Part shown: positions 1-46,975 of the stretch, in pieces
Layout: every line of letters starts with the position of its first letter
How positions within the stretch are numbered: position 1 is the stretch's first letter
NCBI RefSeq assembly: GCF_964204645.1
Contig: NC_134033.1
Coordinates: forward strand, 5,604,231-5,668,230
DNA from: Tubulanus polymorphus
Taxonomy: Eukaryota; Animalia; Nemertea
Reading direction: 5' to 3'
Length of the DNA: 64,000 nt
Program-made: the position numbers and the translations under genes
The notes under the pieces: model-generated
The model's input: only the letters and a program-made list of their open reading frames with translations
Database searches by the model: none
What the model was told of the DNA's origin: nothing

Positions 1-41
1 GCTGGACGATATCGCATTTTTGGAATGCGACTCTAGACCAG
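1..41 (+). CDS. Partial exon: C-terminal end of a MAM-like domain
   Basis: Reads LDDIAFLECDSRP (MAM-type [IA]LDDI...C ending), followed by phase-1 donor G|GTAAAG that matches the phase-1 acceptor at 950. Confidence 0.6.
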
Positions 42-3000
42 GTAAAGACAAAAATGTGCATAGATATACCTCCGCTTTAATTGGTAATTGTTTTTTATGT
101 CGATTGTTTGAAAAAAGTCCCCTTCGCATCAATCGGGCAAACGTTTCATGATTTCCGCAGGCATCGGTTTAAAGACACCCTACGTACACACCTTGTGTCG
201 GAAATATAGGGAAAACCATCAAGTAGAAATTTAACAAATGTTTGTTAGCCTCCGAAGCGCACCCCCTGTATGCTGATCGGAAGAAATGGCTGAATTATTG
301 CGTAGGCTTTGGTTAAAAAAAATCATCTAGGACTTTGAAATATCGGGTAGTCCCTCTGTAGGCAGATCAGGAGATATGGGAGCACCCCGTGTAGACATAT
401 CAGAAGAAATGTTTGAAATATTTTTCGGACTGTAGTCCGAACGGACCCCAACCAAATTTCAAAAAGTCTGGTAAAACCTGCAGGTCAGGCAGAAATATAA
501 AGCCACCTGTAGGCAGATCAGAAGAAATGGCTTTATTATTGTGTAGGCTTTGGTCATTAGATACCATATGACGAGTTTCAGGTTTTGGAAGCAATTCTAA
601 GTTGAATATGTCCGACGGACAACAATTTAAGAACGGAGTTAGGCCTAATTGACAATTTTGTGGAAAATTCCACGCCAGTGCGATGCATTACAAGCTTACC
701 GCTATATTGTGTCTACATTACCGCCATATCGTCAAATTGCATCTACGTTGATTTTAACTTACCAACCAATAGTTACCAGCTCGGAGTACCAGCGAAGTCC
801 ATCGATATTTGATACACCGCATTATGGCGTAAACGCGTTGAAAGGGATGAGATGACGGACCGATCGAGATCCCAATAACCCACTAGGTCCCCGAGCTGAA
901 GTATCTTTGTATTATCGGTTTGAAAGATCTGATTGCTTTTCTATTTCAGCGAGTTTAACCCCGGAGATTGTTTTGGAAGACGTAGAAATGGTCGACGTTC
1001 ACAACCAAGCTGTTTACATGACGTCACCGGACCCGGCGCTGCGCCCGCAGATCCTGCTCGATCGCGTGCATCTGCACCGGTTTTCGGGAATACACACGCC
1101 GCGAGTCATGCGCATAATTGACGCGTACACCTTGGAGTTCGGCGTCAAGAACGCCAACGTAACTCTACGTAACTTTGCGACGTACGACTTGAATCTACCG
1201 GGTATTCGCATTGACGCTTACGCGCTCGATCGTTCGAAATTCGAACTGGTCGGCTCGACCATCAACGGAACTCTCAACGCTGTTTTGTACGTCAACTACG
1301 GTTACCAGATCCCTTTCGAAGGCCGGTATCCGTTCGTTGCGCGTATTCGCAATTCTTCGATAACGGCGACGCGCGCAGAGCGGAAGAACTCGTTTACCAT
1401 CGCGATTATGTTCTACGGCGTCGCGTTGAATATCACGAATAGCCGCATCAACGAGAACCGTGGATACGGGGTGATGTTTGCGCACCGCACGGAGGCGACC
1501 ATCCGCGACAGTCAGCTGTTGTGGAATGCGCCGGCGAACTACTTGACGCAGAACAATCATGTCGTTCAACTCGAGTTCACGAGCGTTTCGATGGCGAATA
1601 GTTCGTTTTACAATCCGGGAACGACGAAACAGATTCAATGGCGGAATATGAACGGACAGAAAGTGAGCGTCGCGTGGAACTGGTGGGGACAGGCGTCTCA
1701 ATCGGCGGTCGGTAGCGTAATAAACGCAGCGACTCAGCACGGTTGGAGACCGACTATTGAATATTTACCGATCATTCCGTTTAACGACCCGGCGTATGAA
1801 TCAGGTGAGTAAACAAGCGACACCTACCATAAGTATAATCGGCTATCACCGCAGTAGTTGATACCCTATTGCGCACTGTCGACACCTGGTGGATCCTCAC
1901 TTGCCACAAGTGGAATCCTGTATTGCCACAGTAGTTGATGTCCTACTGCAAACTAGCGACACGCGCTGGTGAATTCTAACTTGCTGCAAGTGGAATCCAT
2001 GATTGCAACAGTAATTGATATCCTACTGCACACACACGACACCTGGTGGAGTTCACTTGCCACAAGTAAAATCCGTTATTGCTGCAGCAGATGATGCCCT
2101 AGACTTTAACCAATCGGCTCCTGAGAACCTCACTTGCCACAGGTAGAATCCTCTATAGCTGCAGTAGTTGAAGTCCTACTAGCCGGTCTTTACTGGCGAC
2201 AGTAACTCTGAGTATTTTCTTTTCAGTTATAATTTGTCCGATTGGTTGGTATATCTCGGGATCGAGTTGTTTGTTATATCATGGCGGGGCCATGTCATTT
2301 TCGAACGCTTTCAAAACTTGCGCGGTAAGGTTTTTAGAATACCATTCAAAAGTAGTCTGCCCTCATTTCATGACAGGAAATGAATTCGTTTTTTTTTTAG
2401 AAATACGCCGGCGGTTCCCCTTTGAAATCAACCAGCGTCGCTAGGGCAAAACATTTATGGCAGAATACCGTCGACCAGTCGGACAAAATTTGGATCGTAG
2501 CGGAGCAGGTGAATAAAACATTCGCAAATTAAAAAAATGTTGATTGAAAACCTAGATCCAGAGTCAAAATCCCATAACTGTGTAGCTGGGTTCAGAGTCA
2601 AATTGAAACTACACCACCGTGGAACAGGTTCCACAGTTGAAACGAGCCCGCAAACTAGCGGAGCTAAGTTCTGAGTAAAAATCCACACAACTTTCGAACT
2701 GGATTTACAGTTGAAATAAACCCACAAAACTTGGAGCTAAAATCCAATCAGCGACATTGCACCCGCACTGTTGTGTTACTTGATCCAGAGTTATAATCAT
2801 ACCTGAATATATTGTGGAACTAGATTCAGAGTAAAATCTAACCCACAAAATCGTGATACTGAATCGCAAAAAGACCTTTAAGATCTCTAATCATGTTTTT
2901 AGGATGTTGATTCTTGCTACACTCGCTCTGTATTCGGTGATGACCTGAGTAATTCGGTAGATTGTAACAGTCTATATCCGTTCATCTGTGACCTCGTCCG

Positions 3001-6000
3001 TGGTGAGTTCGCCTAACACCCCTTTGCTTATTGCACTCGGGAGACCTGACTTCAGAGTCTGAATACTGTCTGTCATACAAACTCCCCGTGACCCGTAATT
3101 TCATTGATAATCAGTTGATCTGTGTTCTGTATGCATCACTTTGTTCAATCAGGATTTTGCATTCAAAAATAAACTTTGAATTCATATGAATGGGTTTTTA
3201 TCTATAATCGGCGATAGTTTACTCAGCATACGCCCGCGTAATGCTGAAAATCTGCTTTTGTCCCCGTATTGTGGCGCCACCTATATCGTTGTGTTATGCT
3301 TATGAATAGGCCACGACGTCATAGCAGCATCTAGCATTATGGGAGCGTAAGCTGAGTATCGCTGATTAATGAAAAGAAAAACAACTTTTGGAAAAATCGT
3401 TGTTTATTTCTGAAGGCAAATTGCTTCCGGAATAAATCGATGCATAGACAAGTAGATAAGCCGATCATCAACGAAATGAAAAAACGTCGCACGAAGAACG
3501 TGTGTGTGCCGTACGTACAGTAGTTTTTTTGGAATGTGACTCCTGACATAGCGAGCCCAACATTTCTAACCGCTTGATTTTTCTTCCATCTAGACACGCC
3601 TCCGCAATTGTTCCGGTAATGGAATTTGCATCGGGCAGAAGTGCGTCTGCGCTCAAGGTTTCCACGGCGACGCTTGTAACGGCTTCGATTGTTCGGCCGT
3701 TCAAAACTGTAATGGCCACGGAAAGTGCGTCGCCGCCAATACGTGTAAATGTGACCCGGGCTGGCGTGTAAGTTTGGAACATGTATACCTTTTGAATTTT
3801 CATAATCCGTTCACTGCTAAAACTTTCCTACCTTTGAATGCTGAGGCAAAGACTGAGACAGCTATGCATCTAGCCCCGTAGTGCGGCGTAACGTAGTAAT
3901 AGGAAGTGCTTCTACGAAGCTGTGCGGTGAATTTACTAACTGCAAAAATGTTTGACAGGTGCGGCCATCTTGCAATAAGGATTTTAACTAATTTAGATAA
4001 CATCGGTACAATTTACCATGACACAAAATTGTAGGTGGTAGACGTAATCTAGGTTGGTGGATTAGGCCTATACACATTATGGTAGACATAATTTAGGGTT
4101 GGTGAATTATACACTGCATCACTCCGAATACGTAATGTAAAAAGGTTAAATTATACACTGCACCACGGGACACACTTTATAAGGGGTTGGTGGATTGTAC
4201 ACCGCCCCACGGGGTATACTTTATATGGGGCTGGTCGATAGTACATCGCACCATGGGGTAGACGTTATTTGGGGCTGGTTGATAGTATATCGCACCATGG
4301 GGTAGACGTTATTTGGGGCTGGTTGATTGTACATCGCACCATGGGGTAGACGTTATTATGGGCTGGTTGATAATACATCGCACCACGGGTTAGATGTAAT
4401 ACGGAGTTGGTGGATTATACACCGAACAACGGGGTGGTCGTAATTAGGGTTTGATGTATTATACACGGCACCACGGGGCAGACGTACTACGAGGTATGTG
4501 GATAATATACCGCACACGGGGTATACGTAATAATTGGTTGGTGAATTATACATTGCATCACGCGGTAGACATAAGTTTGGGTTGGTGGAGTATACACCGT
4601 GCCAAGGGGTAGACGTAGTAAGGGGTTGGTGAATTTCATCACAATACGGTTTAGACGTAATTTATTGTCTGTCACATATGCTCTCCTTGCGACGTTTGGA
4701 TCCATAATTTCGTTAATAATCAAATTATCTGTGGATATTACGCATCAATTTGTTCAAAAAGGGATATGCATTCAGAAATGAATTATGAATTAGCCTAAAT
4801 TTGCTTTTGTATTCATGTTTCAGCGAAAGTTTACCTTGCATACGTTCAACGCGTGACGCCGAAAAACGGCTTTTGCGTTGTGACGTCATAACAACCTCTC
4901 TGGGTGTCCGCGGAGTGGTTTTTTCAGCATTACGTGAGCCGTGTGCCGAGGGAACTATCGCTGATAAATGAAAACAAAAACAACTTTAGTAAAAATCGTT
5001 GTTTATTTCTGAACGCAAGTTCCTAACTGATCATATCGATGCATAATGAAGCTTGATCAACCGATTATTAACGACATTACGGATCAAAACGTCGCGCGGA
5101 GACCATGTGTGACAGAGATTAGGGCGGATGGATTATACACCGCACCGCGGTGTTAGTGTAATTAGGGGTGGAGATTATACACTGCATTATGGGGTAGACA
5201 CAATTGAGGTTGGGCAGATTATGCACTGCACCACCAGGAAGACGTAACTTACGGTTGGTGGATTATAGGGGTAGGCACAATTTAGGACGGGCGGATCATA
5301 CACTGTGCCTCGGGTAATATACGATTAAGGGTTGGTGGACTATACACCGCATCATGGGGACGTCACAATATAAGATGTTTGCATTACATACCACACCGCG
5401 GGGTAGGCACTATTCATGGTGGTTGGGTAATACAACACACGGTGGGGTAGATGTACAAAAAAGCATTCACGTCAACGGTGTTTATTTCCAGGGATTGGCC
5501 TGTCAAATCGACGACTGTTTAGCTCATGATTGCACGTCGTGCTTAAGAAAACCCGGCTGCGGTTTCTGCGCGTACCCGTTGTCTACCGGGTTCACGGAGT
5601 ATCGCTGCATCGCCGGAGATGACCACGGTGCGTACGAGCAGACAACATTCCGACACGATGAATTCAAACACTGCGTCAGCGGCGTCGCCTGGTTTAAACA
5701 CAGTTGCATTACTATCAATAAATTAAACCAACAAAACGGCTGCGTCTTCAACAGAGGAGTAACGGTGCGTATATGATGTATAATCGTATGTAATAAAAAT
5801 GACAATGATGACGTTGATGAAGATGGCAAAATTAACTGCCTTAAATGCACCGCGAAGGCCTTCAAAAATAAAAAGAGCATTTCTTTTTAGTTCCCGTTTT
5901 GTCCTAATTCCTGCATGAATATAAAAACAGTTCACCATAGACAAACGTCACTGAATCGCATTTGGCTATGAGTAAAAATGTCAATTATTTTTCAAATAAA

Positions 6001-33000: not shown

Positions 33001-36000
33001 ATCGACTTTTGCGATCTTAGTAGATTTGAGCACGGTCGCTCGAGGTTGGGCCGTAGTTTCAGATAGCTGCAAACGTGAAATGTTTTACAACCAAACATGT
33101 ACCGCGGTTCCTTAAGAATTATTTTGATAGAAACTGCCGTCTAGTACCGATAGTACACAGAGAAGCAACGAAGTAACAGCTTTCTCTTCACAAATAACTG
33201 AGTTAAAAAAAGATACCATCTTATATATAATCTTTAATATCATTCAAGAACTTTTATTAACTCTTCTCGATACCTACACCACAATCGCATTAATCACAAT
33301 TTAGAGGCACGAGCGGCATTAAAAATCCAAAGCCAGAATATGCATAATGTGTGTCCGTTTTCCTCTGACATCGTTCATTTTGGGATATTTCTCTTGACCG
33401 TATAAAAACATACCTCAGTTTGGTTATAATACGACCAGTGGAAGAGTGCAGTCAAAATAAATCATAAATCATCAAACAGTCATCGTTTTTATATCCATTT
33501 TACAATGCAACATTTATTAAATTAGTTAAAGGTTTATCAGTTGTAAGATACGCAGAACACGTAGATGCGGTCTCAATGTTGATAGATTAATTGCCTACGT
33601 AGGTTCTCCATTTTCTCGTTTGGAAGTATCGTTAATTTGTTGAGTGACGATAGTAATAGATTACCACATAGACTTACCAGGTACCGCAATGAAATCATGC
33701 GTCCGGCGCCTTGTCTAACAAAGGGTATCCCGTGGAAAAACCCGGTTACTAGAGTGAAAATGAAGAAATTCCGTGTTTTTTTTTGAAAATTCCGCGATAT
33801 GACAACACCGCATAGTAGAAGCTGTATTATCAACTGGCCGAGTTCTATCGGTAAATTGATTAGCACGCTTGCTTTCGCGTATGAGACCCGGACTCACCCC
33901 CGGTGAGTGCGCGTAATTCCAATGACAGTTCCCTCAATCATTAAAACGTTAATTCTATTTCAAAATAGAAACCAGGTCTAAGCATTAGCTAATTCTTCTA
34001 AACTGGTTCTCAAATTAGGGCCTGTTCATCTGAACTTTGAATTAATCCGCTAAATTGGTACTAGTCCACGAGAGTATATAGCCTTGGTTCTTCTGAACTG
34101 GGCCCTTTTCACCTCAACTGGGCTGTAGTCTACTAAACTGGGTATTTGTTCTATTTAACTGGCCTGGGCTTTGGTCCAAACTCTAAACTGAGAAATTCAC
34201 CTGAATTAGGCCCCAGTTCCCTTAAGCGGGCCCTGTTCGCCAAGACTGGTCCCAGTTCTTCTTAACTGGACCATGGTCTTCGAACTGTGACTGAGTTCTC
34301 TAATAACTTTCAATGTCTGACTCGATTACAGAATATTTAGCTTAAATCATGAATGTTATAGTTCATCTATTCGAAAAAGTGCAAGATCTTGTTTAAAAAA
34401 ACAAGCTGTGCTGTTGTGTGAGTTTTGCAATAAGTGAAAATCAGTTCATTTTCAACCCGTCCCCAGAATTGTAGACCTGGATCCAATACTAATCGACGAT
34501 GCAAAAAAGCACATTTTCGAATATACAATACCATATGGCGATTAATGACGACAAATAACATCAAGTCCGATAGTGTTTTCTTGAACTAGTAGATCATTTA
34601 AAGTTTTGACTGTCCAATAGTCGTCTTCGGGAATACTGTATTCCCGCTGATGACTACGATATAAGTAAAAAAGTTGACGAAAAACTACTACCTCAAGGAA
34701 ACTGTAATATTTTTTGTTAATTTTCATATTCGCTCATCGTCACCACACGGACATAGTGTTTTATCAATTGTCACCACAGATTAAATATTTGACTTTTTTT
34801 TATTTAGCGTGTCAAGTGTCTTGTTCCGGTCACGGTCAGTGTAATAATGGGACATGCGTCTGTGATACTGGTTGGGACGGAACTGACTGTTCTATAGGTG
34901 AGTATAACGCACAAAATATTAACTTGTTTTTCAATCGGCCAGGTAATCTTCTGAACTGCAATAAACATTTAAATTCAGTTCATTTCTATAATCTGTTATG
35001 GTCAGTTTAATCATTATCTAAAAAAAAGAAATGTACAGGGTTGATAGGCAGCCGGCCGAGTCAACTTTTAAGCTAGGCAAACTAAAATGGAAAACAAAAG
35101 GTATCAATTTTAGCCCCAAAGTCGTGAGTAAGAGTTTAAACACTGAATGAAAAAATAGTTGATTTTCAAGTAAATTCTAAGTCAAATCTTAACTCACAAC
35201 TGTGAAACTGGGTCTAGGAAAACAAAATGTAAAACATTTTTTAATAATCACTTCAGCTCCACCGAGTTGGATGACTTGAATCTAAGACCAGTCTTATCTC
35301 AAGAACTGAGCCTTGCGCTATCTGAATGCAATTTTATTGTCATTATTGTAAGAACTCAACGAATCGAGTCTCGGGTTTAAGACTATTTCAGGTGGTTTAG
35401 GATTACGATTACGTTTCTAGAAAAATGCTTTCACATAATGAAATAGAATTGTTTACCGATGTATATATGCCTCCGTTCGTCGCAAGACCTATGAATATAC
35501 TATCCCAATGCTGCAAGCAAATTGAACATTGATAAGTGGAGGGTTGGAGTAGGAAAACCTAGAGATACTGAACAATTCGAGGTATATGGCTTCATAGCAA
35601 TCGAACTGATTTTACACGCTATCTATATCGTAGGAATTTGCAGTAACTGTTCCGAACACGGAGTTTGTAAATCGAGTGGTTTTTGTGAATGCGACGTAGG
35701 TTGGGATGGAACGACTTGTAACATTAAAGGTACGGTTACAAACATACATGTGTTAATATCGAAACACGCATATGTCAATCTTCTAACACGCACATGTCAA
35801 TCTGCAATGATGCGCATGCCATTTATCCAAACATGCACACGTGAATTATCCAAACATGCACATGCCAACTATCCAAACAAGCGCATGAAAACTATCCAAA
35901 CATGACCATGTGAATTATCGAAGCATGAACATAACAATAATCCAAATATGAACATGTGAATTATTAAAAAATGCACATGACAATTATACAAACATGCTCA

Positions 36001-39000
36001 TGTCAACAATCCAAATCATGTGATTTATTCAAACATACATCAATCTGCAGTTACGCATATGTTTATTACTAGACATGGGCATGTTTATTTATTTCCAAAC
36101 ATGAGCTTGTCAATGTGAATGTCCCCTAAATGTACATGTCAATCTTCTGATTCAGACATGCATGCGTTAATCTGCATTGATATGCAAGTCAATCTGGAAA
36201 AATGCACATTTCAATTTCCAAACATGCACATGTCAAACATTTACGTGTTTCATAATCTCTAAACGTGCACATGTAAATGTGATATGTAGTGTTGTTTTTT
36301 TTTTCAGCGATATGTCTGGCAGTGAACAACTGTTCCAGTAACGGAGTTTGTAAAGCGATCGATACTTGTCTATGCAATAAAGGATTTTCCGGTATGTTTT
36401 ACACCGAGCTACTTGCATGCACCGCCAGATGGCGTGACTCTACCGTTAACTCATTTTCTATGACCTTTGATCTTGTAATTTATACGGCTTACAATTCCAA
36501 ATGTTATGAACCTAGTAACCAGAAAGATATGACATATCTACTCTGAACGTTTGGTTTAGTTTTCATTCATAATTCATTTAATCAAAAAAGAAAAAAGTGA
36601 ATTCGATTTTGGTTGTAATATATAAGAAATTGATGTACGAAAAACTACTGGCGACACCTGGTGGATCCTCGCTCGCAGCAATAGCGTTGTAGGTTCCCTG
36701 TTGGAATGTGAACGTTGTAAAGGACAATCGTATGACATATAACGATATTCGTGCAACAAAAACCCAATATCGTTAAACTAATTTCTGGTGTTAGTAGACA
36801 GTTCAATCTTAATCAAGGCTGCTCGGGTGAATTCCTGAACGCATGTAAGATGTAGATGATCAGTTTTTTGGAAAGTGTGCTGAAAGATTTTTTTCACATT
36901 TTGGTGTCCATTTACATCACTAACTGTGAAAGAAATTAAATTTTCTGATTATCATCAAAACAGGTGCTGACTGTAGCGTAGCGGTCACTTGCAGAAATGT
37001 ATCGTTCTGTTCGGGTCACGGAGATTGCGTCGATTTCGACGTCTGCCGCTGTTTCACCGGTTGGACGGGATCTAACTGCATGAAGCCTACCTGTGAAAAA
37101 ATGAACTATTGTTCCGGTAGGTTCAATTCAATATCTCAGTGATATGATGTCATATTGGGATTGGTGGAGGCGTGCTTATAGATAGTCGAATTGCTAGGCT
37201 TTGCTAATGTCAAACGGTGATTTAATGCGGGTTGCCATCTCTCTGAAAAGGTCAATTTGGATCTAATTTTTTTGTTATCAAATTTGATGATATCATTTGG
37301 GGATTCTATGAAGTTGTCTTTTCTGTCCATAATGACAGATCAGTGCCCAGTTTCATAGTTTTGGCTTCAACTAAGGACTAATTAAAGGCCATCTAGTTCT
37401 CTAAAAATCTAACAACTTAAAATCGGTCCTAAGATTTTCAGACCCTTTTCAGACCCCCGATTCGGTTATACTATAGTGGATTCGTGGGGCATCCATCTTA
37501 TCTGGCTAAGGCTTGAAAATTTGACGATGGCATAGACACAGACGAGATGGTCATCTCTTGCAGGCTTTATAAAACAATAAAAGCAAATTATTGATCACAT
37601 GTTGGGTTTATGAAGAGTTCTGGAAATGAATATGATGATGTCATGACGGGATTACGAGTCTTTTTCGTAAGGTTTATCAGTAATGATGTCGAAGTTGGAT
37701 GATTTGTTTTCTCGAACAATGTCCCTGATAGTATTTCCACGATAACATTGCGTTGAACAGTAATCCGCGTCGGTCCGATCCGAATTGAGCAAAGTCTACT
37801 GTAAGAGCCCAAGTAAGAGCTATATCAATTACTAGAGAAGTTGATGATGTCATGGGGTGATTCGATGAAGAGCGTCATGTTGCGCTACGTTAGTGTTGAT
37901 GGTAATTAGAAATGATTGGTTATTTGCAGGTCGGGGTGTGTGTATCGGTTTCGACGTGTGTCAGTGCAATCCTGATTGGACGGGTACGGCGTGCTCCGCG
38001 CCGGACTGCTCCGCTCTCAACGACTGCTCCCAACACGGGTCGTGCAACACGCCGAACAACTGTACCTGCGACGACGGCTATACCTCGCTCGACTGCAGCC
38101 AGATGGCGCTATGTCCGAACAATAACGACTGCTTTAAACGCGGTATCTGTTTGAAGAACGTAACGACCTCCGAATCCAGCTGCAGGTGCGCACGAAAAAA
38201 AACAACAAACGATTCATTTGTTTATAACGTACGCATACGTAGTGGTTTTGTACAGTTCGGGATTACAGGGAAATGGAGGGAATTAATTTTCGCTCCAAAA
38301 AATAATTTGCTTGAAAAAAGCTTTAACAAGTTCGCAAAAATTTATTGAGTCGAACAAACAGTTCTTGGTGTAATGTTTGACGCTGATTTCGGCTTTTTAA
38401 ATCGATTTTATTCTTAGCACACCAAGACAGGGACAACAACATGTCAGAGAATAGTCAGAGGTGGTCAATTAAGTGGCCTCACTTTTAGTGCGAATGCCCA
38501 CAACGATGGAATCAATTCTTAGTTTATTTTCAATTTAACTACAATTTTTGATTTTAAATTACTCTAGTTTTTGTTGAAATCTACAACATGATACTAACAA
38601 TGAACTTTTAATCGTCACAATGTCAAATATCCACTGGTTAACCCTAATCAACTGTTGAAAAGACAGGGATTGGATGATTTATATTTTATGCGTACCTTCT
38701 AAACGAATGATCCCAAAAATGGCGAACAGTTTTCCAGAAAGTCTCGCATCCACCTTTAATTCTGTGGATATTTTCCTCTTACAGCTGTTACTCCGGTTAC
38801 TACGGGACGCGGTGTGAGTTCGCGCGTTGCGATGAAGTTCAGAACTGTTCCGGTCACGGTCGATGTAAAGAACCGAATCTGTGCGAATGTTTCGTCGGTT
38901 ATAACGGAACGAAGTGCGACGGCTTCAGCTGCGATTCACTTCAGAAATGTTCAGGTAACGCTTTTGCGCACAGAGTAGACGTTGTTGTCATATCTCGGAA

Positions 39001-41946
39001 TGACGGAATCACGGATTTACATATTCAAAAAAAACGGAATCTCTTCGATTTCACTATAAATAATAATACCCGGTGTCGGACAAGGCTCCGGACCTATCAA
39101 TGCACTGAGTTAGCTTCGAATCACACTATAAGCACGCAATTTTATCTGACATTGTTCTATGACACCAGTAATACCAGCTGCAGAAACAGTCAGAATGTAG
39201 TCGGAAAAAGAGATTGGCACCAGGGCAATAATCGGTTATCGAAAGTAATCGACTTTTGCGATCTTAGTAGATTTGAGCACGGTCGCTCGAGGTTGGGCCG
39301 TAGTTTCAGATAGCTGCAAACGTGAAATGTTTTACAACCAAACATGTACCGCGGTTCCTTAAGAATTATTTTGATAGAAACTGCCGTCTAGTACCGATAG
39401 TACACAGAGAAGCAACGAAGTAACAGCTTTCTCTTCACAAATAACTGAGTTAAAAAAATATACCATCTTATATATAATCTTTAATATCATTCAAGAACTT
39501 TTATTAACTCTTCTCGATACCTACACCACAATCGCATTAATCACAATTTAGAGGCACGAGCGGCATTAAAAATCCAAAGCCAGAATATGCATAATGTGTG
39601 TCCGTTTTCCTCTGACATCGTTCATTTTGGGATATTTCTCTTGACCGTATAAAAACATACCTCAGTTTGGTTATAATACGACCAGTGGAAGAGTGCAGTC
39701 AAAATAAATCATAAATCATCAAACAGTCATCGTTTTTATATCCATTTTACAATGCAACATTTATTAAATTAGTTAAAGGTTTATCAGTTGTAAGATACGC
39801 AGAACACGTAGATGCGGTCTCAATGATGATAGATTAATTGCCTACGTAGGTTCTCCATTTTCTCGTTTGGAAGTATCGTTAATTTGTTGAGTGACGATAG
39901 TAATAGATTACCACATAGACTTACCAGGTACCGCAATGAAATCATGCGTCCGGCGCCTTGTCTAACAAAGGGTATCCCGTGGAAAAACCCGGTTACTAGA
40001 GTGAAAATGAAGAAATTCCGTGTTTTTTTTGTTGAAAATTCCGCGATATGACAACACCGCATAGTAGAAGCTGTATTATCAACTGGCCGAGTTCTATCGG
40101 TAAATTGATAAGCACGCTTGCTTTCGCGTATGAGACCCGGACTTACCCCCAGTGAGTGCGCGTAATTCCAATGACAGTTCCCTCAATCATTAAAACGTTA
40201 ATTCTATTTCAAAATGAAAACCAGGTCTAAGCATTAGCTAGTTCTTCTAGACTGGTTCTCAAATTAGGGCCTGTTCATCTGAACTTTGAATTAATCCGCT
40301 AAATTGGTACTAGTCCACGAGAGTATATAGCCCTGTTTTTCTGAACTGGGCCCTTTTCACCTCAACTGGGCTGTAGTCTACTAAACTGGGTATTTGTTCT
40401 ATTTAACTGACCTGGGCTTTGGTCCAAACTCTAAACTGAGAAATTCACCTGAATTAGGCCCCAGTTCCCTTAAGCGGGCCCTGTTCGCCAAGACTGGTCC
40501 CAGTTCTTCTTAACTGGACCATGGTCCTCGAACTGTGACTGAGTTCTCTAAACTAGTCTCTGGAATTGTCACCCTACACAGATCTTCGAAAAAGGTGCCA
40601 ACACGTTTTTTTACGAATGAACCCCTGTCTTAAAACTCCAACTTCAACTTACTGATTGCTTCTATTGCTGTTGTTTTCTAGCACACGGAATTTGCACGGG
40701 TTTCGATGTTTGCGCCTGCGACAGCGGGTGGAACTCATCGTTGAAATGTGACGTGGCCACGTGTTCGACTCCGTGTCAGCATTCGGGCGTCTGCGTTTCT
40801 GAAAATACGTGTGAGTGTAAAACCGGCTTCTTCGGTAACGACTGCGGCAACGTGTCAACCATCCCGAACAGCAAAAGTCCAGTTTTTATCGGATATCCGT
40901 GGCCGGTCGTTCCGCTGACCGAAAACTGTCGCCTGGGAACATCGGTATTCAATGCGACGGCCTCCGACGCGGACGCAACCGGGCCGAACTCAGAAATCGT
41001 TTATTCGATATCGACGGTCGAATCGAACCCGTCGTTCGGCATCGATTCGAAAGACGGAACGATCTCGACGATCCGGACGATCGACCGCGAGCGTTACCTC
41101 GCGTCCGGCGGCCGTGTCCTAATTTACGTAACCGCTAAGGATAAAGGCTTTCCTTCGAAAAGCACCACGCGGACCTTGACCGTCGATGTCCTCGATGAAA
41201 ACGACAATTGTCCGGAATTCGCATCGATTCCGGCGCCGGTGAGTTTCGCCGCGAACGAGATTCCGTCTGCTCCGATCGTCCGAGTGACGGCGACCGATGA
41301 GGATTCTGGGAATAACGGCTCGGTCGTCTATTCTATATCCGGTAATACGATGCACGCGTCTAGTTTGAATATAAGCGCCTCAGACGGATCGATAACCGTC
41401 ACGAGGGGAATTCCATCCGGAGAGTTTATCGTTTATGTAAAAGCGTCGGACGAGGGTACTCCGAAACCATGCGTCGTTAAATTCGATTTCAAAGCCCAAA
41501 GCGTCTATCAATCGCTTAAAGCTCCTTCAACTACACCAGCTCCTTCAAGTACACCAGCTTGTACAACTTCACCAGTTTCTGCAATTACACCAACTCCTGC
41601 AACTACACCAGCGCCTACAAAAGCGCAGCCTGTTACATCAACAGAGCCGACTACTCAATTCTCAGCTCAACCATCGTCTACGCAACCCACTTCAACCAAT
41701 CAACCCGTTACAGCAACGGGTGCTCGAACAACTACTCCACTTCTCGCTAAACCGCCAACTCCAGCTGCAAATGACGACAAACTGTTCATCACATTAATCG
41801 CCTCTTTGGGAGGTGTGTTGGGGTTGATAACTCTCATCGTGGTCGCTTGCTGCGTGCACAGAATGCGCCAAAAACAAACCCTGGCTGCGAAAAGGAATCA
41901 GCCGCCTGAGGATTTCGAAGCGATGATGATGGATCGAAGATATTGA
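1..41946 (+). CDS. 5'-truncated multi-exon gene for a giant mosaic type I membrane protein (MAM / beta-helix / C-type lectin / EGF / PSI / unknown / VWD / EGF / cadherin / mucin stalk / TM); VWDE-like in its VWD-EGF portion
   Basis: Exons read by hand, all GT-AG: <1-41, 950-1804, 2227-2324, 2401-2508, 2903-3002, 3594-3767, 5492-5764, 6652-6765, 7116-7398, 8183-8380, 9067-9322, 10296-10431, 16752-16949, 17368-17534, 17669-17825, 20771-21029, 21352-21595, 22091-22226, 22477-22617, 22709-22848, 23535-23680, 24428-24574, 24896-25091, 25511-25650, 31212-31406, 31561-31718, 31989-32109, 34808-34897, 35634-35729, 36308-36391, 36964-37116, 37930-38185, 38785-38954, 40682-41946 (TGA). Phases match at every junction except 3002/3594. 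Total ~7.3 kb. Confidence 0.88.
240..600. repeat. Degenerate intronic tandem repeat
   Basis: Recurring CTGTAGGCAGATCAGAAGAAAT(G)G units. Confidence 0.55.
950..1804 (+). CDS. Exon: right-handed parallel beta-helix (pectin-lyase-like) region
   Basis: TTTCAG acceptor and G|GTGAGT donor. Repeating IRNSSI / ITNSRINENRGYGV / IRDSQL / MANSSFYN strands ending in AWNWWG, typical of animal beta-helix domains such as those in Bark beetle-like proteins. Confidence 0.8.
1815..2185. repeat. Degenerate intronic minisatellite (~75-80 bp unit)
   Basis: Recurring ACACCTGGTGG..CTCACTTGCCACAAGTGGAATCC..TTGC..CAGTAGTTGAT. Confidence 0.65.
2227..3002 (+). CDS. C-type lectin-like domain (exons 2227-2324, 2401-2508, 2903-3002)
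   Basis: CPIGWYISGSSCLLY...AFKTCA, then KIWIV, then SCY...VDCNSLYPFICD. No EPN/QPD or WND motif visible. Confidence 0.8.
3069..3510. mobile_element. Degraded MITE, same family as 4668-5116
   Basis: 3345-3510 aligns with 4935-5112 (AAAAATCGTTGTTTATTTCTGAA, AAACGTCGC); left end TCTGTCATAC. Confidence 0.5.
3594..3767 (+). CDS. Exon: two EGF-like repeats (first one lacks its Cys1)
   Basis: RNCSGNGICIGQKCVCAQGFHGDAC and DCSAVQNCNGHGKCVAANTCKCDPGWR; donor CGT|GTAAGT. Confidence 0.85.
4030..5460. repeat. Intronic minisatellite (~40-45 bp unit), interrupted by a MITE
   Basis: Recurring GGTTGGTGGATTATACACCGCACCACGGGGTAGACGTAAT. Confidence 0.75.
4668..5116. mobile_element. MITE with long imperfect TIRs
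   Basis: TCTGTCACATATGCTCTCCTTGCGACGTTTGGATCC at the left is an imperfect reverse complement of GGATCAAAACGTCGCGCGGAGACCATGTGTGACAGA at the right; similarity extends ~120 bp. Confidence 0.7.
5492..6765 (+). CDS. PSI-like domain and following Cys-rich exon (5492-5764, 6652-6765)
   Basis: DCTSCLRKPGCGFC...C matches the PSI CxxCL...CGWC pattern; both exons phase 0. Confidence 0.75.
7116..10431 (+). CDS. Four exons of an unassigned beta-rich region with three GD[VL][IM] repeats (7116-7398, 8183-8380, 9067-9322, 10296-10431)
   Basis: Open, phase-consistent exons: RGDVIVSSQADGVFHKI, TGDVIIGSHSDGYLETV, IGDLMSLRSAEPIAGQ. Confidence 0.8.
10534..10637. repeat. Short palindromic (foldback) element
   Basis: CCAGTTCCACAGTTGTGAGTTA...TAACTCAGAACTGTGGAACTGG; a related half lies near 35186-35213. 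Confidence 0.6.
11331..12679 (+). pseudogene. LINE ORF1 (coiled coil plus L1/Tnp_22-like RRM), frameshifted
   Basis: RRSNLVFVGVPE, FQRAHR, PRSITVKF, IYEDFPLEIRAKRK; ATG at 11331 with frame breaks in A-runs. Confidence 0.8.
12731..16141 (+). pseudogene. LINE ORF2 (apurinic endonuclease, reverse transcriptase, C-terminal Cys/His motif), broken into several frames
   Basis: LNVGGL, LTETK, GDFNA, VDYI, SDVH (APE); KAPGCD, NYRGITLL, QAGFR, KAFD, GLRQGENLSPVLF, LYADD, YLG (RT); CNKC..DEYHFILKC. Confidence 0.92.
16752..21595 (+). CDS. Five exons: furin site followed by an unassigned beta-strand-rich domain (16752-16949, 17368-17534, 17669-17825, 20771-21029, 21352-21595)
   Basis: RTPRVRR|AASS at 16878-16889; alternating hydrophobic/polar strands; phases consistent. 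Confidence 0.8.
18336..19440 (-). pseudogene. Transposase pseudogene (Sola1-like), 5'-deleted
   Basis: FHNPKKDACGLC, FDLQQ, FYSRRLSCYNF, WHEGIAGRGSNEIASC, ADGCSGQNKN, HGQNEGDAVHS. In-frame stop just upstream of 19380; frameshifted C-terminus PKLSADKFNDLMRLC...FYQNLSH-stop. Confidence 0.8.
19508..20479. mobile_element. Non-autonomous foldback DNA transposon (P- or hAT-like) nested in the Sola-like element
   Basis: ~205-bp near-perfect TIRs beginning CACAGGGGCTCGTTACGATAG; perfect 8-bp TSD CTATAGCA at 19500-19507 and 20480-20487. Confidence 0.9.
21877..21944 (+). repeat. (GGGA)n microsatellite
   Basis: Pure GGGA tract. Confidence 0.95.
22091..23680 (+). CDS. Four cysteine-rich exons (22091-22226, 22477-22617, 22709-22848, 23535-23680)
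   Basis: CMCECFCD, ECQCELCPD, CPCECADG..DGSCP, CDCTCKDG..DGQC, CECTCKNC..DGQCVC; canonical splice sites. Confidence 0.85.
23225..23355 (+). mobile_element. Short tRNA-derived SINE
   Basis: A box TGGCCGAGTGG, B box GGTTCAAACCC, A-tail, and 13-bp TSD ACCACAATGAGAG at 23212-23224 and 23356-23368. Confidence 0.85.
24428..32109 (+). CDS. EGF plus von Willebrand type D domain and downstream Cys segment (24428-24574, 24896-25091, 25511-25650, 31212-31406, 31561-31718, 31989-32109)
   Basis: WGDPHITTLDG-RDFDYYDIGEY; TAGLCGFLDGDPTNDF...FAESW; SCIFDVAVT. These are hallmark VWD/VWDE-type motifs. Confidence 0.9.
26128..26508. repeat. ~47-bp tandem repeat (second array at ~29705-30002)
   Basis: AAAAGTGTGAGTAAAGTGTGAGTAAAATAAGTTAGATTTTCAATGTT. 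Confidence 0.9.
27145..27426 (-). CDS. Small island ORF: hydrophobic segment, coiled coil, C2H2-type zinc finger
   Basis: TAAATG start; CEICSKKYKTEKGFRNHKIGH. Confidence 0.5.
   Translation of the reverse strand: MSENILNLLNLIYRNQEEMKLIMMISGLLSFSVYGLKQLFHFYDDFEIKYIELKNNINYISDRMNNIKRCEICSKKYKTEKGFRNHKIGHKLE
27805..29090. repeat. 24-bp tandem repeat array
   Basis: AACAATTTATCATTTCAACTGTCA, about 50 copies; source of the spurious MINCLTVE/QFIISTVK ORFs. Confidence 0.95.
29431..29598 (+). CDS. 55-aa Lys-rich island ORF (paralogue at ~25854 is disrupted)
   Basis: TAAATG start; MGDMKAFLATMNNRIKPAKKQFEIKKLIDVTKEIEHKILKLEKIKTKYGEKVSAN. Confidence 0.35.
   Translation: MGDMKAFLATMNNRIKPAKKQFEIKKLIDVTKEIEHKILKLEKIKTKYGEKVSAN
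30018..30671 (+). pseudogene. ~217-codon island ORF with two premature stops; three IxIQCDLE repeats and a C-terminal CxCGGKY..H..KH zinc finger
   Basis: Frame continues through TAG at 30381 and TAA at 30576 to TAA at 30669-30671; a truncated paralogue lies at 26524-26810. Confidence 0.6.
32311..34681 (+). repeat. Local segmental duplication: copy of 38936-40550 flanked by a 379-bp direct repeat
   Basis: 32311-32689 matches 34303-34681; 32690-34302 is nearly identical to 38936-40550. Confidence 0.92.
34808..38954 (+). CDS. Tenascin/teneurin-type EGF repeat array (34808-34897, 35634-35729, 36308-36391, 36964-37116, 37930-38185, 38785-38954)
   Basis: Repeated CSGHGxC...CxCxxGWxGxxC; about 10 repeats counting those that finish in the last exon. 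Confidence 0.92.
35740..36275. repeat. Degenerate ~20-bp intronic tandem repeat
   Basis: Recurring ATCCAAACATGCACATGTCAA. Confidence 0.7.
40682..41946 (+). CDS. Terminal exon: EGF, two cadherin repeats, Ser/Thr/Pro stalk, TM helix, short cytoplasmic tail
   Basis: ASDADATGPNSEIVYSI, IDRE, AKDKGFP, VLDENDNCPEF, ATDEDSGNNGSVVYSI; TTPAP-rich stalk; LFITLIASLGGVLGLITLIVVACCV; tail ends DRRY-stop. Confidence 0.92.
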
Positions 41947-45715: not shown

Positions 45716-46975
45716 ACTAGCGGACCAGGGACACCATGCTCACTTGGGAAGTGGTTTCAAATGCTCAACAATCTAACAATTTCAATACATAACGCCCTCT
45801 AGTGACCATATACAAAAACCAATGACCTTGAAACCCTCCACAATCATAGAACATGTGAGCAGCTATGATTTTGTAATTGATTGTGATAACAAAATATGCC
45901 TCGTTACCAATTTAATATGGAAATACTAAGTTATTCTACTATTCAACGCCCCTGGTGACCGTATGCAAAACCCATTGACCTTAAAACTCACCACAATCGT
46001 AGTACATGTCATGAAATACAACTTTGCAATTGATCATAGTAACAAAATATGCCTAGGTACCAATCTAATAAGGAAATACTAAGCCATTCTACTATTCAAC
46101 GCCCCCTGGTGACTATATGGAATAACTAATGTCCTTAAAAACTCACCACAATCATAGACGATGTCATGACCTACAACTTTGCAATTGATCATGGTAACAA
46201 AATATGCCTGGGTACAAATATAATATAGCGATACTAAGTTATTGTATTATTCAACGCCCCCTGATGGCCACATACTAAAACCAATGACCTTGAAACTTAC
46301 CAAAATCAGAGAACACGTTGTGGGCTACAACTTTCCAATTGAATATAGTTACACAATATGCTTAGGTATCAATTTAATGTGGAAAAACTTTTTCCCACCT
46401 ACGAATGAGTACTGATGACACCAAAATGGCCGCCAATTGCGTCATAATTGGCTGATCAAAAATACCAGTCCCAGGTATAAAACATCCCTCTCTAAAGAAT
46501 ACCCATCAGCAGTTGCAATGAGAAATGGCAAACCAGTAGGAAGCTACAGGACCTAGAATTCTGGCCAAAATTGACATTTTTGGGCACTAAAAAGGTTATA
46601 GGACGGCCATCTTGAGTCAGATCGACCCAATTTTCTTATGCTGATGGGCCTTTGGTAGATTCAAATATAAACGAAAGATCAAGGTAATTGATCAAAGCGT
46701 CTTCAAAATTTCACCATGAAAACTTCGAAAATGTTTAAAAAGTGCTGATTTTGGCAAACAACAATGGCTGCCAGTCGGCCATCTTGAATCTGACAGGGCC
46801 AGATTTTTGGGCTGACGATGTGTTTAGGGTAGATACATGTATAAACCTAATATCAAGACATTACCTTGAAGCGTCTTCAAAACTTCCCAAAATAACTGGA
46901 TTCCGTCTATGGACGGACGGACGGACGAAAAGTGAACACAATAGCCCGCTGGGACTAAAGTCCCAAGTGGACTGA
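45716..46975 (-). mobile_element. Non-autonomous Helentron-associated element (HINE/DINE-1-like), copy 1
   Basis: Minus strand: 5' subTIR CCACTTGGGA with hairpin GGGACTTTAGTCCC, (GTCC)n microsatellite, internal ~140-bp tandem repeats, 3' subTIR TCCCAAGTG and CTAGT end; T-rich flanks. Confidence 0.75.

What the first reader, a model, noticed from the sequence alone, without database searches (positions are those of the whole stretch)
1..41946. Giant mosaic receptor joining MAM, beta-helix, C-type lectin, PSI, VWD, EGF array and membrane-proximal cadherin repeats
Seen: one phase-consistent chain of ~34 exons (>2400 aa within the window) with this domain order and only a ~29-aa cytoplasmic tail. 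Known: beta-helix plus C-type lectin occurs in Bark beetle-type proteins, VWD plus EGF in VWDE-like proteins, and EGF-PSI-lectin in attractin/MEGF8. I do not recognise a named protein with all of these plus cadherin repeats and a mucin stalk. Inference: a lineage-specific adhesion, glycan-recognition or matrix-tethered surface protein assembled by exon shuffling.
Basis: partly seen in the sequence, partly recalled or inferred. Interest (0 to 1): 0.8.

Follow-up and report, generated by a model that had tools for sequence, protein, structure and literature searches.

The report
Giant conserved mosaic surface protein gene

Summary
The window comes from the nemertean Tubulanus polymorphus and is not human. 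Positions 1-41946 carry exons 7-40 of RefSeq model XP_074657284.1 (4250 aa, "uncharacterized"). That is 34 exons, all GT-AG, coding 2415 aa. The chain ends in a Ser/Thr/Pro stalk, one membrane helix and a 29-aa tail.

Evidence by domain:
- Strong: VWD (with a GDPH motif), a 10-unit teneurin-type EGF array, and 2 cadherin repeats.
- Good, through an amphioxus homologue: the C-type lectin domain.
- Weak in this species: beta-helix, MAM (almost wholly upstream of the window) and PSI.

The "lineage-specific, exon-shuffled" reading is not supported. Proteins from three Branchiostoma species or hybrids and from the brittle star Amphiura align colinearly at 30-35% identity over about 2000-2350 aa. 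Of the 33 in-window introns, 29 are shared in position and phase with at least one of two compared genes.

Upstream the gene encodes SRCR/beta-helix units. The whole protein therefore joins an Anakonda/Bark-like head to a VWDE- or MUC4-like VWD-EGF stalk with cadherins. No paper describing this family was found. Function is inferred: a processed adhesion or matrix-tethering surface glycoprotein.

The parts
1..41 (+). Exon 7 of the RefSeq model, last 41 bases only (the exon starts 178 nt upstream of the window). It codes the C-terminal end of a MAM-like domain.
   Evidence: Exact mapping. MAM evidence is weak: Pfam 0.003 on upstream exon L001:18111-18242. P0008 has a MAM at 1.5e-7 directly before its beta-helix. 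Local alignment E 0.06. PDB found nothing.
950..1804 (+). Exon 8: third right-handed beta-helix unit, ending in the family's N-W-W-G cap motif.
   Evidence: Pfam Beta_helix 8e-4, below the cut-off. The orthologous amphioxus exon gives 2.2e-5. NWWG is invariant in 4 orthologous exons. The AlphaFold model is all-beta but pLDDT 43.7, so it is not usable.
2227..2324 (+). Exon 9: C-type lectin-like domain, part 1.
   Evidence: It aligns to P0008 1815-1899, which matches solved CTLDs: NKG2D 1.1e-6, antifreeze II 1.4e-4, LOX-1 1.8e-4.
2401..2508 (+). Exon 10: C-type lectin-like domain, part 2.
2903..2956 (+). Exon 11 as in RefSeq: C-type lectin-like domain, part 3, cut short.
2957..3002 (+). In-frame continuation that RefSeq leaves out. 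It codes the conserved last strand and two cysteines of the lectin domain and is followed by a consensus GTGAGT donor in phase 1.
   Evidence: The amphioxus and brittle-star genes have a phase-1 intron here. The frame cannot be joined to exon 12 with canonical sites. Unresolved.
3594..3767 (+). Exon 12: two EGF domains. The first lacks its first cysteine.
   Evidence: Pfam EGF_Teneurin 4.8e-12 and EGF_2 1e-9. Alignment.
5492..5764 (+). Exon 13: PSI-like cysteine knot plus a conserved extension.
   Evidence: Pfam PSI_integrin 0.014, below the cut-off. The cysteines are invariant in homologues. PDB found nothing.
6652..6765 (+). Exon 14: start of a conserved region that matches no Pfam family.
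7116..7398 (+). Exon 15: first copy of a roughly 57-aa repeat unit (C...GD-x-IVS...G-x-L-x-KV).
   Evidence: hhalign of family sub-alignments: 84% for units 1 and 2, 65% for units 1 and 3. The AlphaFold model is all-beta, pLDDT 55.
8183..8380 (+). Exon 16: conserved linker (Y-x-D-F-x-Q-x-V).
9067..9322 (+). Exon 17: second copy of the repeat unit.
10296..10431 (+). Exon 18: start of the third copy of the repeat unit.
16752..16949 (+). Exon 19: end of the third unit and start of a poorly conserved region. It holds the dibasic site RVRR at 16878-16889.
   Evidence: A similar R-x-K/R-R site occurs at the aligned place in 5 of 7 homologues. Cleavage there is inference only.
17368..17534 (+). Exon 20: variable region.
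17669..17825 (+). Exon 21: variable region.
20771..21029 (+). Exon 22: variable region.
21352..21595 (+). Exon 23: variable region.
22091..22226 (+). Exon 24: cysteine-rich C-x-C-x-C...DGS repeats.
   Evidence: No Pfam hit. The cysteines are invariant in homologues.
22477..22617 (+). Exon 25: cysteine-rich repeats.
22709..22848 (+). Exon 26: cysteine-rich repeats.
23535..23680 (+). Exon 27: cysteine-rich, EGF-like.
24428..24574 (+). Exon 28: EGF-like end and start of the VWD domain, with the GDPH motif at 24547-24558.
   Evidence: GDPH is invariant in all 7 homologues.
24896..25091 (+). Exon 29: VWD domain.
25511..25650 (+). Exon 30: VWD domain.
31212..31406 (+). Exon 31: C-terminal third of the VWD domain.
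   Evidence: Pfam VWD 4.3e-7, 30.8 bits against a cut-off of 22.9. PDB: FCGBP 1.4e-19, VWF 5.5e-7, MUC5B, MUC5AC and MUC2.
31561..31718 (+). Exon 32: conserved segment after the VWD domain.
31989..32109 (+). Exon 33: C8-like module.
   Evidence: Pfam C8-3_MUC4 2.3e-5, 24.0 bits against a cut-off of 25.
34808..34897 (+). Exon 34: EGF 1 of the array (phase 1-1).
   Evidence: EGF_Teneurin 3.8e-9..
35634..35729 (+). Exon 35: EGF 2 (phase 1-1).
   Evidence: EGF_Teneurin 2.3e-7..
36308..36391 (+). Exon 36: EGF 3 (phase 1-1).
   Evidence: EGF_Teneurin 4.8e-5..
36964..37116 (+). Exon 37: EGF array.
   Evidence: EGF_TEN 4e-7..
37930..38185 (+). Exon 38: EGF array.
   Evidence: EGF_TEN 7e-10..
38785..38954 (+). 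Exon 39: EGF array.
   Evidence: EGF_TEN 2.7e-6..
40682..41946 (+). Exon 40, the last exon: two EGF domains, two cadherin repeats, stalk, membrane helix, tail and stop codon.
40909..41193 (+). Cadherin repeat 1.
   Evidence: Pfam Cadherin 3.9e-30 with 2 stretches. PDB: CELSR1 5.7e-41 and protocadherins. LTEN and DENDN calcium-binding motifs.
41206..41487 (+). Cadherin repeat 2 (approximate limits).
   Evidence: Second Pfam stretch. DEDSGNN motif.
41482..41781 (+). Mucin-like stalk, 53% Ser/Thr/Pro.
   Evidence: An 18-nt tandem repeat lies at 41520-41620.
41782..41856 (+). Single transmembrane helix.
   Evidence: It is the only hydrophobic peak in the 4250 aa.
41857..41946 (+). 29-aa cytoplasmic tail and stop codon.
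   Evidence: The tail is not conserved with the amphioxus tails and has no PDZ-type end.

Best explanation
Shown:
- Window 1-41946 is the 3' four-fifths of one protein-coding gene of the ribbon worm Tubulanus polymorphus (LOC141910490).
- The product is a single-pass type I surface protein of more than 4250 aa.
- It belongs to an old, so far unnamed bilaterian family that is also present in lancelets and a brittle star.

Domain content of the product:
- The N-terminal head lies mostly upstream of the window. [quoted passage not shown] This is the same set of domains as in the insect tricellular-junction protein Anakonda/Bark.
- The rest is a long stalk. In order it holds two EGFs, a PSI-like knot, and about 860 aa without a known family. 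That region contains three copies of a 57-aa unit, a variable stretch and C-x-C-x-C repeats.
- Then come a VWD domain with an invariant GDPH motif, a C8-like module, ten six-cysteine teneurin-type EGFs, two calcium-linked cadherin repeats, an O-glycosylation-type stalk, the membrane helix and a 29-aa tail.

Inferred mechanism:
- The VWD domain cuts itself between Asp and Pro of GDPH in the secretory pathway, as in FCGBP, SUSD2 and mucins. The two chains then stay joined.
- A dibasic site (RVRR) may allow a second cut.
- The rigid EGF-cadherin-mucin stalk holds the large beta-helix, SRCR and lectin head far above the membrane. There the head binds glycans, matrix or copies of itself on neighbouring cells.
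- The short, unconserved tail argues for a structural adhesion or tethering role rather than signalling.
For: Gene and source: (RefSeq model, exact exon map, all introns GT-AG).

Domains:
- EGF, cadherin, VWD, C8-3, beta-helix and PSI.
- VWD against solved FCGBP, VWF and mucin structures.
- CTLD through P0008.
- MAM and beta-helix order in P0008.
- SRCR in upstream exons.
- SRCR and beta-helix in amphioxus exons.

Family: colinear 30-35% identity over 2000-2350 aa. Intron positions and phases are shared.

Topology: one hydrophobic helix and a 29-aa tail. A signal-peptide-like start lies in an upstream open frame.

GDPH: invariant in 7 of 7 homologues. Autocatalytic Asp-Pro cleavage of GDPH in VWD domains is described in PMC10880436, PMC8267560 and PMC6696261.

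Anakonda domain set: PMC11698045 Fig. 5 legend, PMC5509417 and PMC8006247.
Against: - No transcript data were available, so single-transcript status rests on gene models from four species.
- The RefSeq model lacks a signal peptide. The candidate one lies in an unannotated upstream frame.
- Beta-helix, MAM and PSI are below Pfam cut-offs in this species.
- Both structure predictions were of low confidence.
- The lectin domain cannot be completed in frame with canonical splice sites. It may therefore be defective in this species.
- Homology of the head to Drosophila Anakonda and of the stalk to vertebrate VWDE was not tested by sequence.
- Cleavage, glycosylation, ligand and location are all inferred.
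Confidence: 0.62

Rival explanations
1. One reading: a lineage-specific (nemertean) mosaic recently put together by exon shuffling.
For: - Many module exons are phase 1-1, including EGF exons 34-37.
- The phmmer search with the beta-helix exon against 1.84 billion representatives found only the gene itself.
- The word search with residues 1-2240 also found only the gene itself.
Against: - Colinear homologues exist in three Branchiostoma genomes and in Amphiura.
- 29 of 33 in-window introns are shared in position and phase with an amphioxus or brittle-star gene.
- The blank searches concern the fast-evolving head, which is only 17-23% identical between true orthologous exons.
Confidence: 0.04
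2. A chimeric gene model: two or more neighbouring genes (a Bark-like head gene and a VWDE-like or cadherin stalk gene) fused by automatic annotation.
For: - There is no transcript evidence in hand.
- B. belcheri model P0008 stops right after the VWD domain, and P0009 starts at the third beta-helix.
- The Amphiura model stops inside cadherin repeat 1, and the next called gene starts 468 nt later. Models of this family are therefore error-prone.
Against: - Four independent models (P0001, P0002, P0010, P0011) span head to membrane anchor.
- No internal signal peptide or second hydrophobic segment exists.
- Phases are continuous across every domain boundary and are conserved between phyla.
Confidence: 0.1
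3. It is the non-arthropod counterpart of Anakonda/Bark and works at the vertices of septate junctions. The triple head would recognise three-cell contacts, and the cadherin and EGF stalk would be an ancestral part lost in insects.
For: - It has the same domain set as Aka: signal peptide, SRCR, beta-helices, a CUB- or MAM-type module, a CTLD right after the last beta-helix, and a single membrane helix.
- The Aka domains are taken from PMC11698045.
- From my own knowledge, nemerteans, echinoderms and lancelets have septate-type junctions.
Against: - No sequence comparison with Aka could be run.
- There is no PDZ-type C-terminus; the protein ends ...DRRY.
- The extra 2000-aa stalk has no counterpart in Aka.
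- Location is unknown.
Confidence: 0.15
4. It is mainly a shed apical-matrix or mucus component. After GDPH and dibasic cleavage the large head would be released and the membrane part would be only a delivery anchor, as in MUC4 or zonadhesin.
For: - GDPH is invariant.
- A dibasic site occurs in 5 of 7 homologues.
- Amphioxus members carry a SEA domain next to the membrane.
- This species has a mucin-like stalk and a borderline C8-3_MUC4 match.
Against: - In FCGBP and SUSD2 the GDPH fragments stay disulfide-linked (PMC8267560, PMC6696261), so cleavage need not release anything.
- The calcium-binding cadherin pair suggests a role at the membrane.
Confidence: 0.2

Closest known systems
Anakonda / Bark beetle (Drosophila tricellular septate-junction protein)
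   Same: Both are giant type I membrane proteins. [quoted passage not shown] The Aka domains come from PMC11698045, PMC5509417 and PMC8006247; the domains here come.
   Different: Here a stalk of about 2000 aa (EGF, PSI, unknown region, VWD, EGF array, cadherins, mucin) sits between the lectin domain and the membrane. A MAM-like domain is present. There is no PDZ-type C-terminus. Sequence homology was not tested.
[quoted passage not shown]
   Same: A VWD domain is followed by an array of teneurin-type EGF repeats. The VWDE architecture comes from PMC7390686 and PMC9117669; the features here come.
   Different: VWDE is described as a secreted protein class and, from my own recollection, is about 1600 aa. 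It has no beta-helix or SRCR head, no cadherins and no membrane anchor. Its length put it outside the range of the word searches, so kinship is untested.
MUC4 / SUSD2-type membrane proteins with a GDPH VWD domain
   Same: A VWD domain with a GDPH autocleavage motif is followed by a C8-like module, EGF domains, a single membrane helix and a short tail. A mucin-like segment is also present (PMC6696261).
   Different: No NIDO, AMOP or Sushi domains were found. The C8-3_MUC4 match is just below the cut-off. The head is entirely different.
Teneurins
   Same: The EGF array matches the teneurin 8-EGF model strongly: EGF_TEN 3.5e-67, and Teneurin-3 at 7e-24 in the PDB.
   Different: Teneurins are type II proteins with a YD shell and toxin-like end. 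Their EGF 2 and EGF 5 have odd cysteine numbers for dimerisation (own knowledge). Here all ten EGFs have six invariant cysteines.
Cadherin-related proteins (cadherin superfamily outside the classical cadherins)
   Same: There are two consecutive cadherin repeats with calcium-binding linker motifs next to the membrane.
   Different: There are only two repeats (three in amphioxus), they are membrane-proximal rather than distal, and there is no catenin-binding tail.
Zonadhesin (recalled, not tested)
   Same: The parts list is similar: MAM, mucin-like segment, VWD, EGF, a single membrane helix and a short tail.
   Different: The order and numbers differ (several MAM domains and several VWD domains). 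Zonadhesin has no beta-helix, SRCR, lectin or cadherin domains.

Membership tests
Unnamed bilaterian family (P0001, P0002, P0008-P0012) | Colinear sequence similarity over the whole stalk. | tested here: met
   30-35% identity over 2000-2350 aligned columns, E = 0.
Unnamed bilaterian family (P0001, P0002, P0008-P0012) | Shared exon-intron structure. | tested here: met
   22 of 33 in-window introns are shared with both P0011 and P0012, and 29 of 33 with at least one.
Cadherin superfamily (cadherin-related) | At least two consecutive cadherin repeats. | tested here: met
   Pfam Cadherin 3.9e-30 with 2 stretches. PDB: CELSR1 and protocadherins.
Cadherin superfamily (cadherin-related) | Calcium-binding linker motifs between repeats. 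| tested here: met
   LTEN, DENDN and DEDSGNN are present.
Classical cadherins | Catenin-binding cytoplasmic domain. | tested here: not met
   The tail is 29 aa, unconserved, and matches no family.
Anakonda / Bark | Repeated SRCR plus parallel beta-helix units in the ectodomain. | tested here: met
   SRCR 1.4e-6 and 0.026 in the upstream exons. Weak beta-helix hits in three or four places here. Amphioxus exons give strong hits: Beta_helix 3.3e-17 and SRCR 4.3e-10 and 3.7e-11.
Anakonda / Bark | One C-type lectin-like domain in the ectodomain. | tested here: met
   The last strand is left out of the RefSeq model of this species.
Anakonda / Bark | C-terminal PDZ-binding motif. | tested here: not met
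   The protein ends ...DRRY and the amphioxus proteins end ...NPMY, NPVY or NRAF.
Anakonda / Bark | Sequence homology to Drosophila Aka. | not testable with these tools
   No Aka sequence could be fetched. Single-sequence searches with the head found only the gene itself.
Anakonda / Bark | Location at tricellular junctions. | not testable with these tools
   This needs microscopy.
VWDE | A VWD domain followed by an EGF array. | tested here: met
VWDE | Secreted, with no membrane anchor and no other large modules. | tested here: not met
   The membrane helix lies at 41782-41856, and the protein also has a head and cadherins.
VWDE | Orthology by sequence. | not tested
   VWDE-sized proteins fall outside 0.55-1.75 times the query length. 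Exon-sized queries would also miss them.
MUC4 / SUSD2 type | GDPH motif at the start of the VWD domain. | tested here: met
   Window 24547-24558, invariant in 7 of 7 homologues.
MUC4 / SUSD2 type | NIDO and AMOP (MUC4) or Sushi and AMOP (SUSD2) before the VWD domain. | tested here: not met
   No such Pfam hit in any exon or in 7 homologues.
MUC4 / SUSD2 type | C8-3 module after the VWD domain. | tested here: inconclusive
   PF23263 at 24.0 bits against a cut-off of 25.
Teneurins | Type II topology with a YD-repeat shell after the EGF array. | tested here: not met
   The topology is type I, and there are no YD or Tox-GHH families.
   There is no Kelch hit in P0001 or in any homologue.

The most novel reading that the evidence does not exclude
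This family would be the ancestral full-length form of two proteins now studied separately. The insect tricellular-junction organiser Anakonda/Bark would be its head with the stalk lost. Vertebrate VWDE would be its VWD-EGF stalk with the head, cadherins and anchor lost. In most marine invertebrates one cadherin-bearing giant would then do both jobs at epithelial contacts.
Probability: 0.12. Interest if true: 0.75.

Novelty: new variant of a known kind. Interest (0 to 1): 0.45.

Why it matters
Every module is a known extracellular domain, and giant mosaic adhesion proteins are common in invertebrate genomes. The gene is therefore not a new kind of thing.

What is new is that this exact chain of more than 4000 aa is conserved, introns included, between a spiralian and two deuterostome phyla. 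It still has no name, no literature and about 860 aa without any family assignment.

It also places the domain set of the insect tricellular-junction protein Anakonda, a VWDE-like VWD-EGF stalk and cadherin repeats on a single polypeptide. That gives a concrete, testable lead on where those proteins came from. It also suggests how non-arthropod invertebrates, which have septate junctions but no characterised vertex protein, might build their epithelial contacts.

Tried and rejected
- Beta-helix exon structure. AlphaFold2 on the beta-helix exon with its 3 orthologous exons (A4) gave mean pLDDT 43.7. The model is all-beta with a repeating three-strand pattern but is not reliable, so no fold search was run.
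- Exon 15 structure. AlphaFold2 on exon 15 of the unknown region with orthologous exons (A5) gave pLDDT 55. No fold search was run.
- Alignment A3. Aligning the single beta-helix exon to full-length homologues scattered it over 5000 columns. I discarded that alignment.
- Searches that found only the gene itself. These were the exhaustive phmmer search with the beta-helix exon and the word search with residues 1-2240. The head is too diverged for single-sequence searches, so these blanks say little.
- PDB searches with the two MAM exons and the PSI exon gave nothing significant.
- PDB search with the GDPH exon gave only marginal EGF hits.
- Pfam on the whole 4250-aa model reported only EGF and cadherin families. 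The VWD, C8-3, PSI and beta-helix hits appear only when exons are scanned one by one.
- Self-BLAST of P0001 found no internal repeats in the head at E below 1e-3.
- I looked for a canonical way to join the conserved lectin end (donor after 3002) to exon 12 and found none.
- Byri et al. 2015 is not held in the library.
- Rfam and tRNA scans of the window found nothing.
- I rejected a pseudogene reading because the reading frame is intact over 2415 aa and the cysteines are conserved.
- I rejected a human origin.
Full report
**Source and rules**

The window is identical to part of chromosome record OZ123234.1 of the nemertean Tubulanus polymorphus (assembly GCA_964204645.2). Window position x equals L001 position x + 19745. 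It is not human sequence.

I did not build, save, search or fold a joined exon model of my own.
- Exons were searched one by one by reference.
- Whole-protein work used the public RefSeq model XP_074657284.1, which one search returned as P0001.
- The only joining was an eight-codon check inside. It placed each splice site against that public protein.
- Steps that needed a spliced domain were left out. These were Pfam or folding of the complete lectin, MAM and VWD domains and of the unknown region.

Yes.
- The + strand open pieces coincide with P0001 (4250 aa, "uncharacterized protein LOC141910490").
- Exact mapping gives 40 exons. Exons 7-40 are in the window, which makes 34 exons. All introns are GT-AG with consistent phases.
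- Residues 1836-4250 (2415 aa) are coded in the window.
- The last exon ends with a 100-aa stalk that is 53% Ser/Thr/Pro, the only hydrophobic helix of the protein (41782-41856), a 29-aa tail and the stop at 41944-41946.

**Domain by domain**

Strong:
- Two EGFs in exon 12 (4.8e-12).
- VWD. Pfam gives 4.3e-7 on exon 31. The same exon matches solved VWD domains of FCGBP (1.4e-19), VWF and MUC5B, MUC5AC and MUC2. A GDPH motif lies at 24547-24558.
- Teneurin-type EGF array. EGF_TEN is 3.5e-67 on the model. There are ten units, each with six cysteines that are invariant across four homologues.
- Two cadherin repeats (3.9e-30; CELSR1 and protocadherins) with LTEN, DENDN and DEDSGNN calcium motifs.

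Good, by homology:
- C-type lectin-like domain. The aligned part of amphioxus P0008 matches solved CTLDs, with NKG2D at 1.1e-6.

Weak in this species:
- Beta-helix: 8e-4 here and 2.2e-5 in the orthologous amphioxus exon.
- PSI: 0.014.
- MAM: only 13 codons are in the window. Pfam gives 0.003 on an upstream exon. P0008 has a MAM at 1.5e-7 directly before its beta-helix. The PDB searches found nothing.

Borderline:
- A C8-3_MUC4 match (24.0 bits, cut-off 25) follows the VWD domain.

No family matches exons 14-27, which is about 860 aa. The family alignment shows three parts there:
- three tandem copies of a roughly 57-aa unit (hhalign 84%, 65% and 16%);
- a poorly conserved stretch that begins with the dibasic site RVRR, which has counterparts in 5 of 7 homologues;
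- C-x-C-x-C...DGS repeats with invariant cysteines.

**Relatives**

The region-restricted word searches with P0001 found the following:
- Branchiostoma lanceolatum P0002, misnamed "TNC";
- B. belcheri P0008, P0009 and P0010;
- B. floridae x japonicum P0011;
- the brittle star Amphiura filiformis P0012.

P0011 aligns colinearly with P0001 1897-4131, and P0012 with 1978-3939. Identity is 30-31% over 2060-2357 columns.

Pfam on the seven proteins gives EGF_TEN, Cadherin (6 of 7), Beta_helix (5), SRCR (3), SEA (2), MAM (1) and VWD (1).

I fetched three of the genes. The exon sizes and the series of intron phases from the third beta-helix to the last exon are almost the same in worm, lancelet and brittle star. 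On the alignment, 22 of the 33 in-window introns coincide in position and phase with both P0011 and P0012, and 29 of 33 with at least one.

The mosaic is therefore ancient and not lineage-specific.

**What lies upstream**

The first 1835 aa are coded in about 9.7 kb before the window, in two very large exons and several small ones. They contain SRCR domains (1.4e-6 and 0.026) and beta-helix regions.

The RefSeq model starts inside a beta-helix and has no signal peptide. An unannotated open frame at L001:7280-8245 has a signal-peptide-like start followed by the family's N-terminal motif. It is hit by the P0011 N-terminus at 9e-7. A second open frame extends exon 1 upstream. The model is therefore probably truncated at its 5' end.

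In amphioxus the head reads SRCR, beta-helix, SRCR, beta-helix, SRCR, a weak CUB, beta-helix, followed by the lectin domain.

**Comparison with known proteins**

- Anakonda/Bark. The head has the domain set reported for Drosophila Anakonda/Bark: signal peptide, SRCR, CUB, parallel beta-helices, one CTLD and a single membrane helix. The sources are the PMC11698045 Fig. 5 legend, PMC5509417 and PMC8006247. Aka's PDZ-type end is absent here. No sequence comparison with Aka could be run.
- VWDE and MUC4/SUSD2. The stalk resembles VWDE, which is a VWD domain plus a teneurin-like EGF array (PMC7390686, PMC9117669). It also resembles MUC4 and SUSD2 (GDPH VWD, EGF, anchor). VWDE is secreted and much smaller, and NIDO, AMOP and Sushi domains are absent here. 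VWDE-sized proteins were outside the length range of my searches, so that kinship is open.
- Cadherin superfamily. By definition the protein is a cadherin-related member of the superfamily.
- I found no paper on this architecture.

**Mechanism**

Shown: the domain chain, its topology and its conservation.

Inferred:
- Autocatalytic Asp-Pro cleavage at the invariant GDPH, as in FCGBP, SUSD2 and mucins, with the fragments held together (PMC10880436, PMC8267560, PMC6696261).
- Possible convertase cleavage at RVRR.
- A rigid EGF-cadherin-mucin stalk that presents a large beta-helix, SRCR and lectin head for binding glycans, matrix or like molecules on neighbouring cells.

The short, unconserved tail argues against direct signalling. 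A role at epithelial vertices like Anakonda, or a role as a shed apical-matrix component, are live alternatives.

**Problems found**

- RefSeq ends exon 11 at window 2956, a weak GTAGAT donor. It skips 15 in-frame codons that match the family's lectin end, including two cysteines.
- The consensus donor after 3002 is in phase 1, as in lancelet and brittle star. The only acceptor, before 3594, then runs into a stop codon.
- The first EGF of exon 12 also lacks its first cysteine.
- The cause is either a small assembly error or a real local change in this species. I could not decide which.
- Both structure predictions failed, with pLDDT 43.7 and 55.

**Verdict**

- Observation: confirmed.
- Interpretation: partly supported. 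The gene and its architecture are right; the lineage-specific origin is wrong.
- Novelty: a new variant of a known kind, namely a conserved but unnamed family of giant mosaic surface proteins.
- Interest: moderate, 0.45.

Noticed in passing
window 2957-3002 and 3590-3620: RefSeq skips 15 in-frame codons that code the conserved end of the lectin domain. The strong phase-1 donor after 3002 matches the intron phase in lancelet and brittle star but cannot be joined in frame to the next exon. The first EGF of that exon also lacks its first cysteine. The cause is either an assembly indel or a real lineage-specific change.
   Followed up: partly
L001:7280-8245 and L001:9761-10099 (about 12.5-9.6 kb upstream of the window): The RefSeq model starts inside a beta-helix without a signal peptide. 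Unannotated open frames upstream carry a signal-peptide-like start, the family's N-terminal motif and weak Beta_helix hits. The model is therefore probably truncated at its 5' end, and the protein is longer than 4250 aa.
   Followed up: partly
window 11342-16140 (+): A degenerate non-LTR retrotransposon lies in the 6.3-kb intron between exons 18 and 19, on the same strand as the gene. It has an ORF1-like piece, an endonuclease and a reverse transcriptase (RVT_1 4.7e-39), and is broken into several frames.
   Followed up: partly
window 18418-19486 (-): An antisense open reading frame of 320-328 aa lies inside the intron between exons 21 and 22. It is called as a gene in the public annotation with a DUF7869 hit, and is probably a transposon-derived gene.
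   Followed up: no
window 32686-34303 and 38932-40551; also 32301-32600 and 34293-34592: A 1.6-kb stretch is copied at 97-99% identity into intron 33. It comprises the last 23 bases of EGF exon 39 with its donor site and most of intron 39. The copy is flanked by a 300-nt direct repeat. This is either a recent intragenic duplication or an assembly artefact, and it adds a spare splice donor.
   Followed up: partly
window 26000-31000: The 5.5-kb intron inside the VWD domain is very AT-rich (GC 0.21-0.29). It holds a 24-bp tandem array (27806-29090, 55 copies), 36/47-bp arrays on both sides, and two similar short open frames (26621-26812 and 30018-30380).
   Followed up: no
window 45529-53360: Downstream of the gene lie large satellite arrays: a 31-bp unit (also seen as 93 bp, more than 100 copies in blocks) alternating with a 155-bp unit. 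They have a strong A-over-T skew, and no convincing protein-coding gene lies in 42-64 kb. The long minus-strand ORFs there are translations of the satellite.
   Followed up: partly
window 4150-4635 and 1886-2042: Intronic tandem repeats: a 44-bp unit with 11 copies, and an 80-bp unit with 2 copies.
   Followed up: no
window 21875-21944: A perfect (GAGG)17.5 microsatellite lies in the intron between exons 23 and 24.
   Followed up: no
L003:47415-47915 (Amphiura filiformis): The brittle-star model stops inside its first cadherin repeat, and another called gene (1089 aa) starts 468 nt later on the same strand. The gene is probably split in two by the annotation.
   Followed up: no
L001:1-2909 (upstream neighbour): The gene upstream on the same strand codes a NACHT-domain protein.
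   Followed up: no
cytoplasmic tails of P0002 and P0010 (alignment A1): Two amphioxus members end in an NPxY-type motif (NPMY, NPVY). These two also carry a SEA domain next to the membrane where the worm protein has a mucin-like stalk. The worm tail has neither feature.
   Followed up: no
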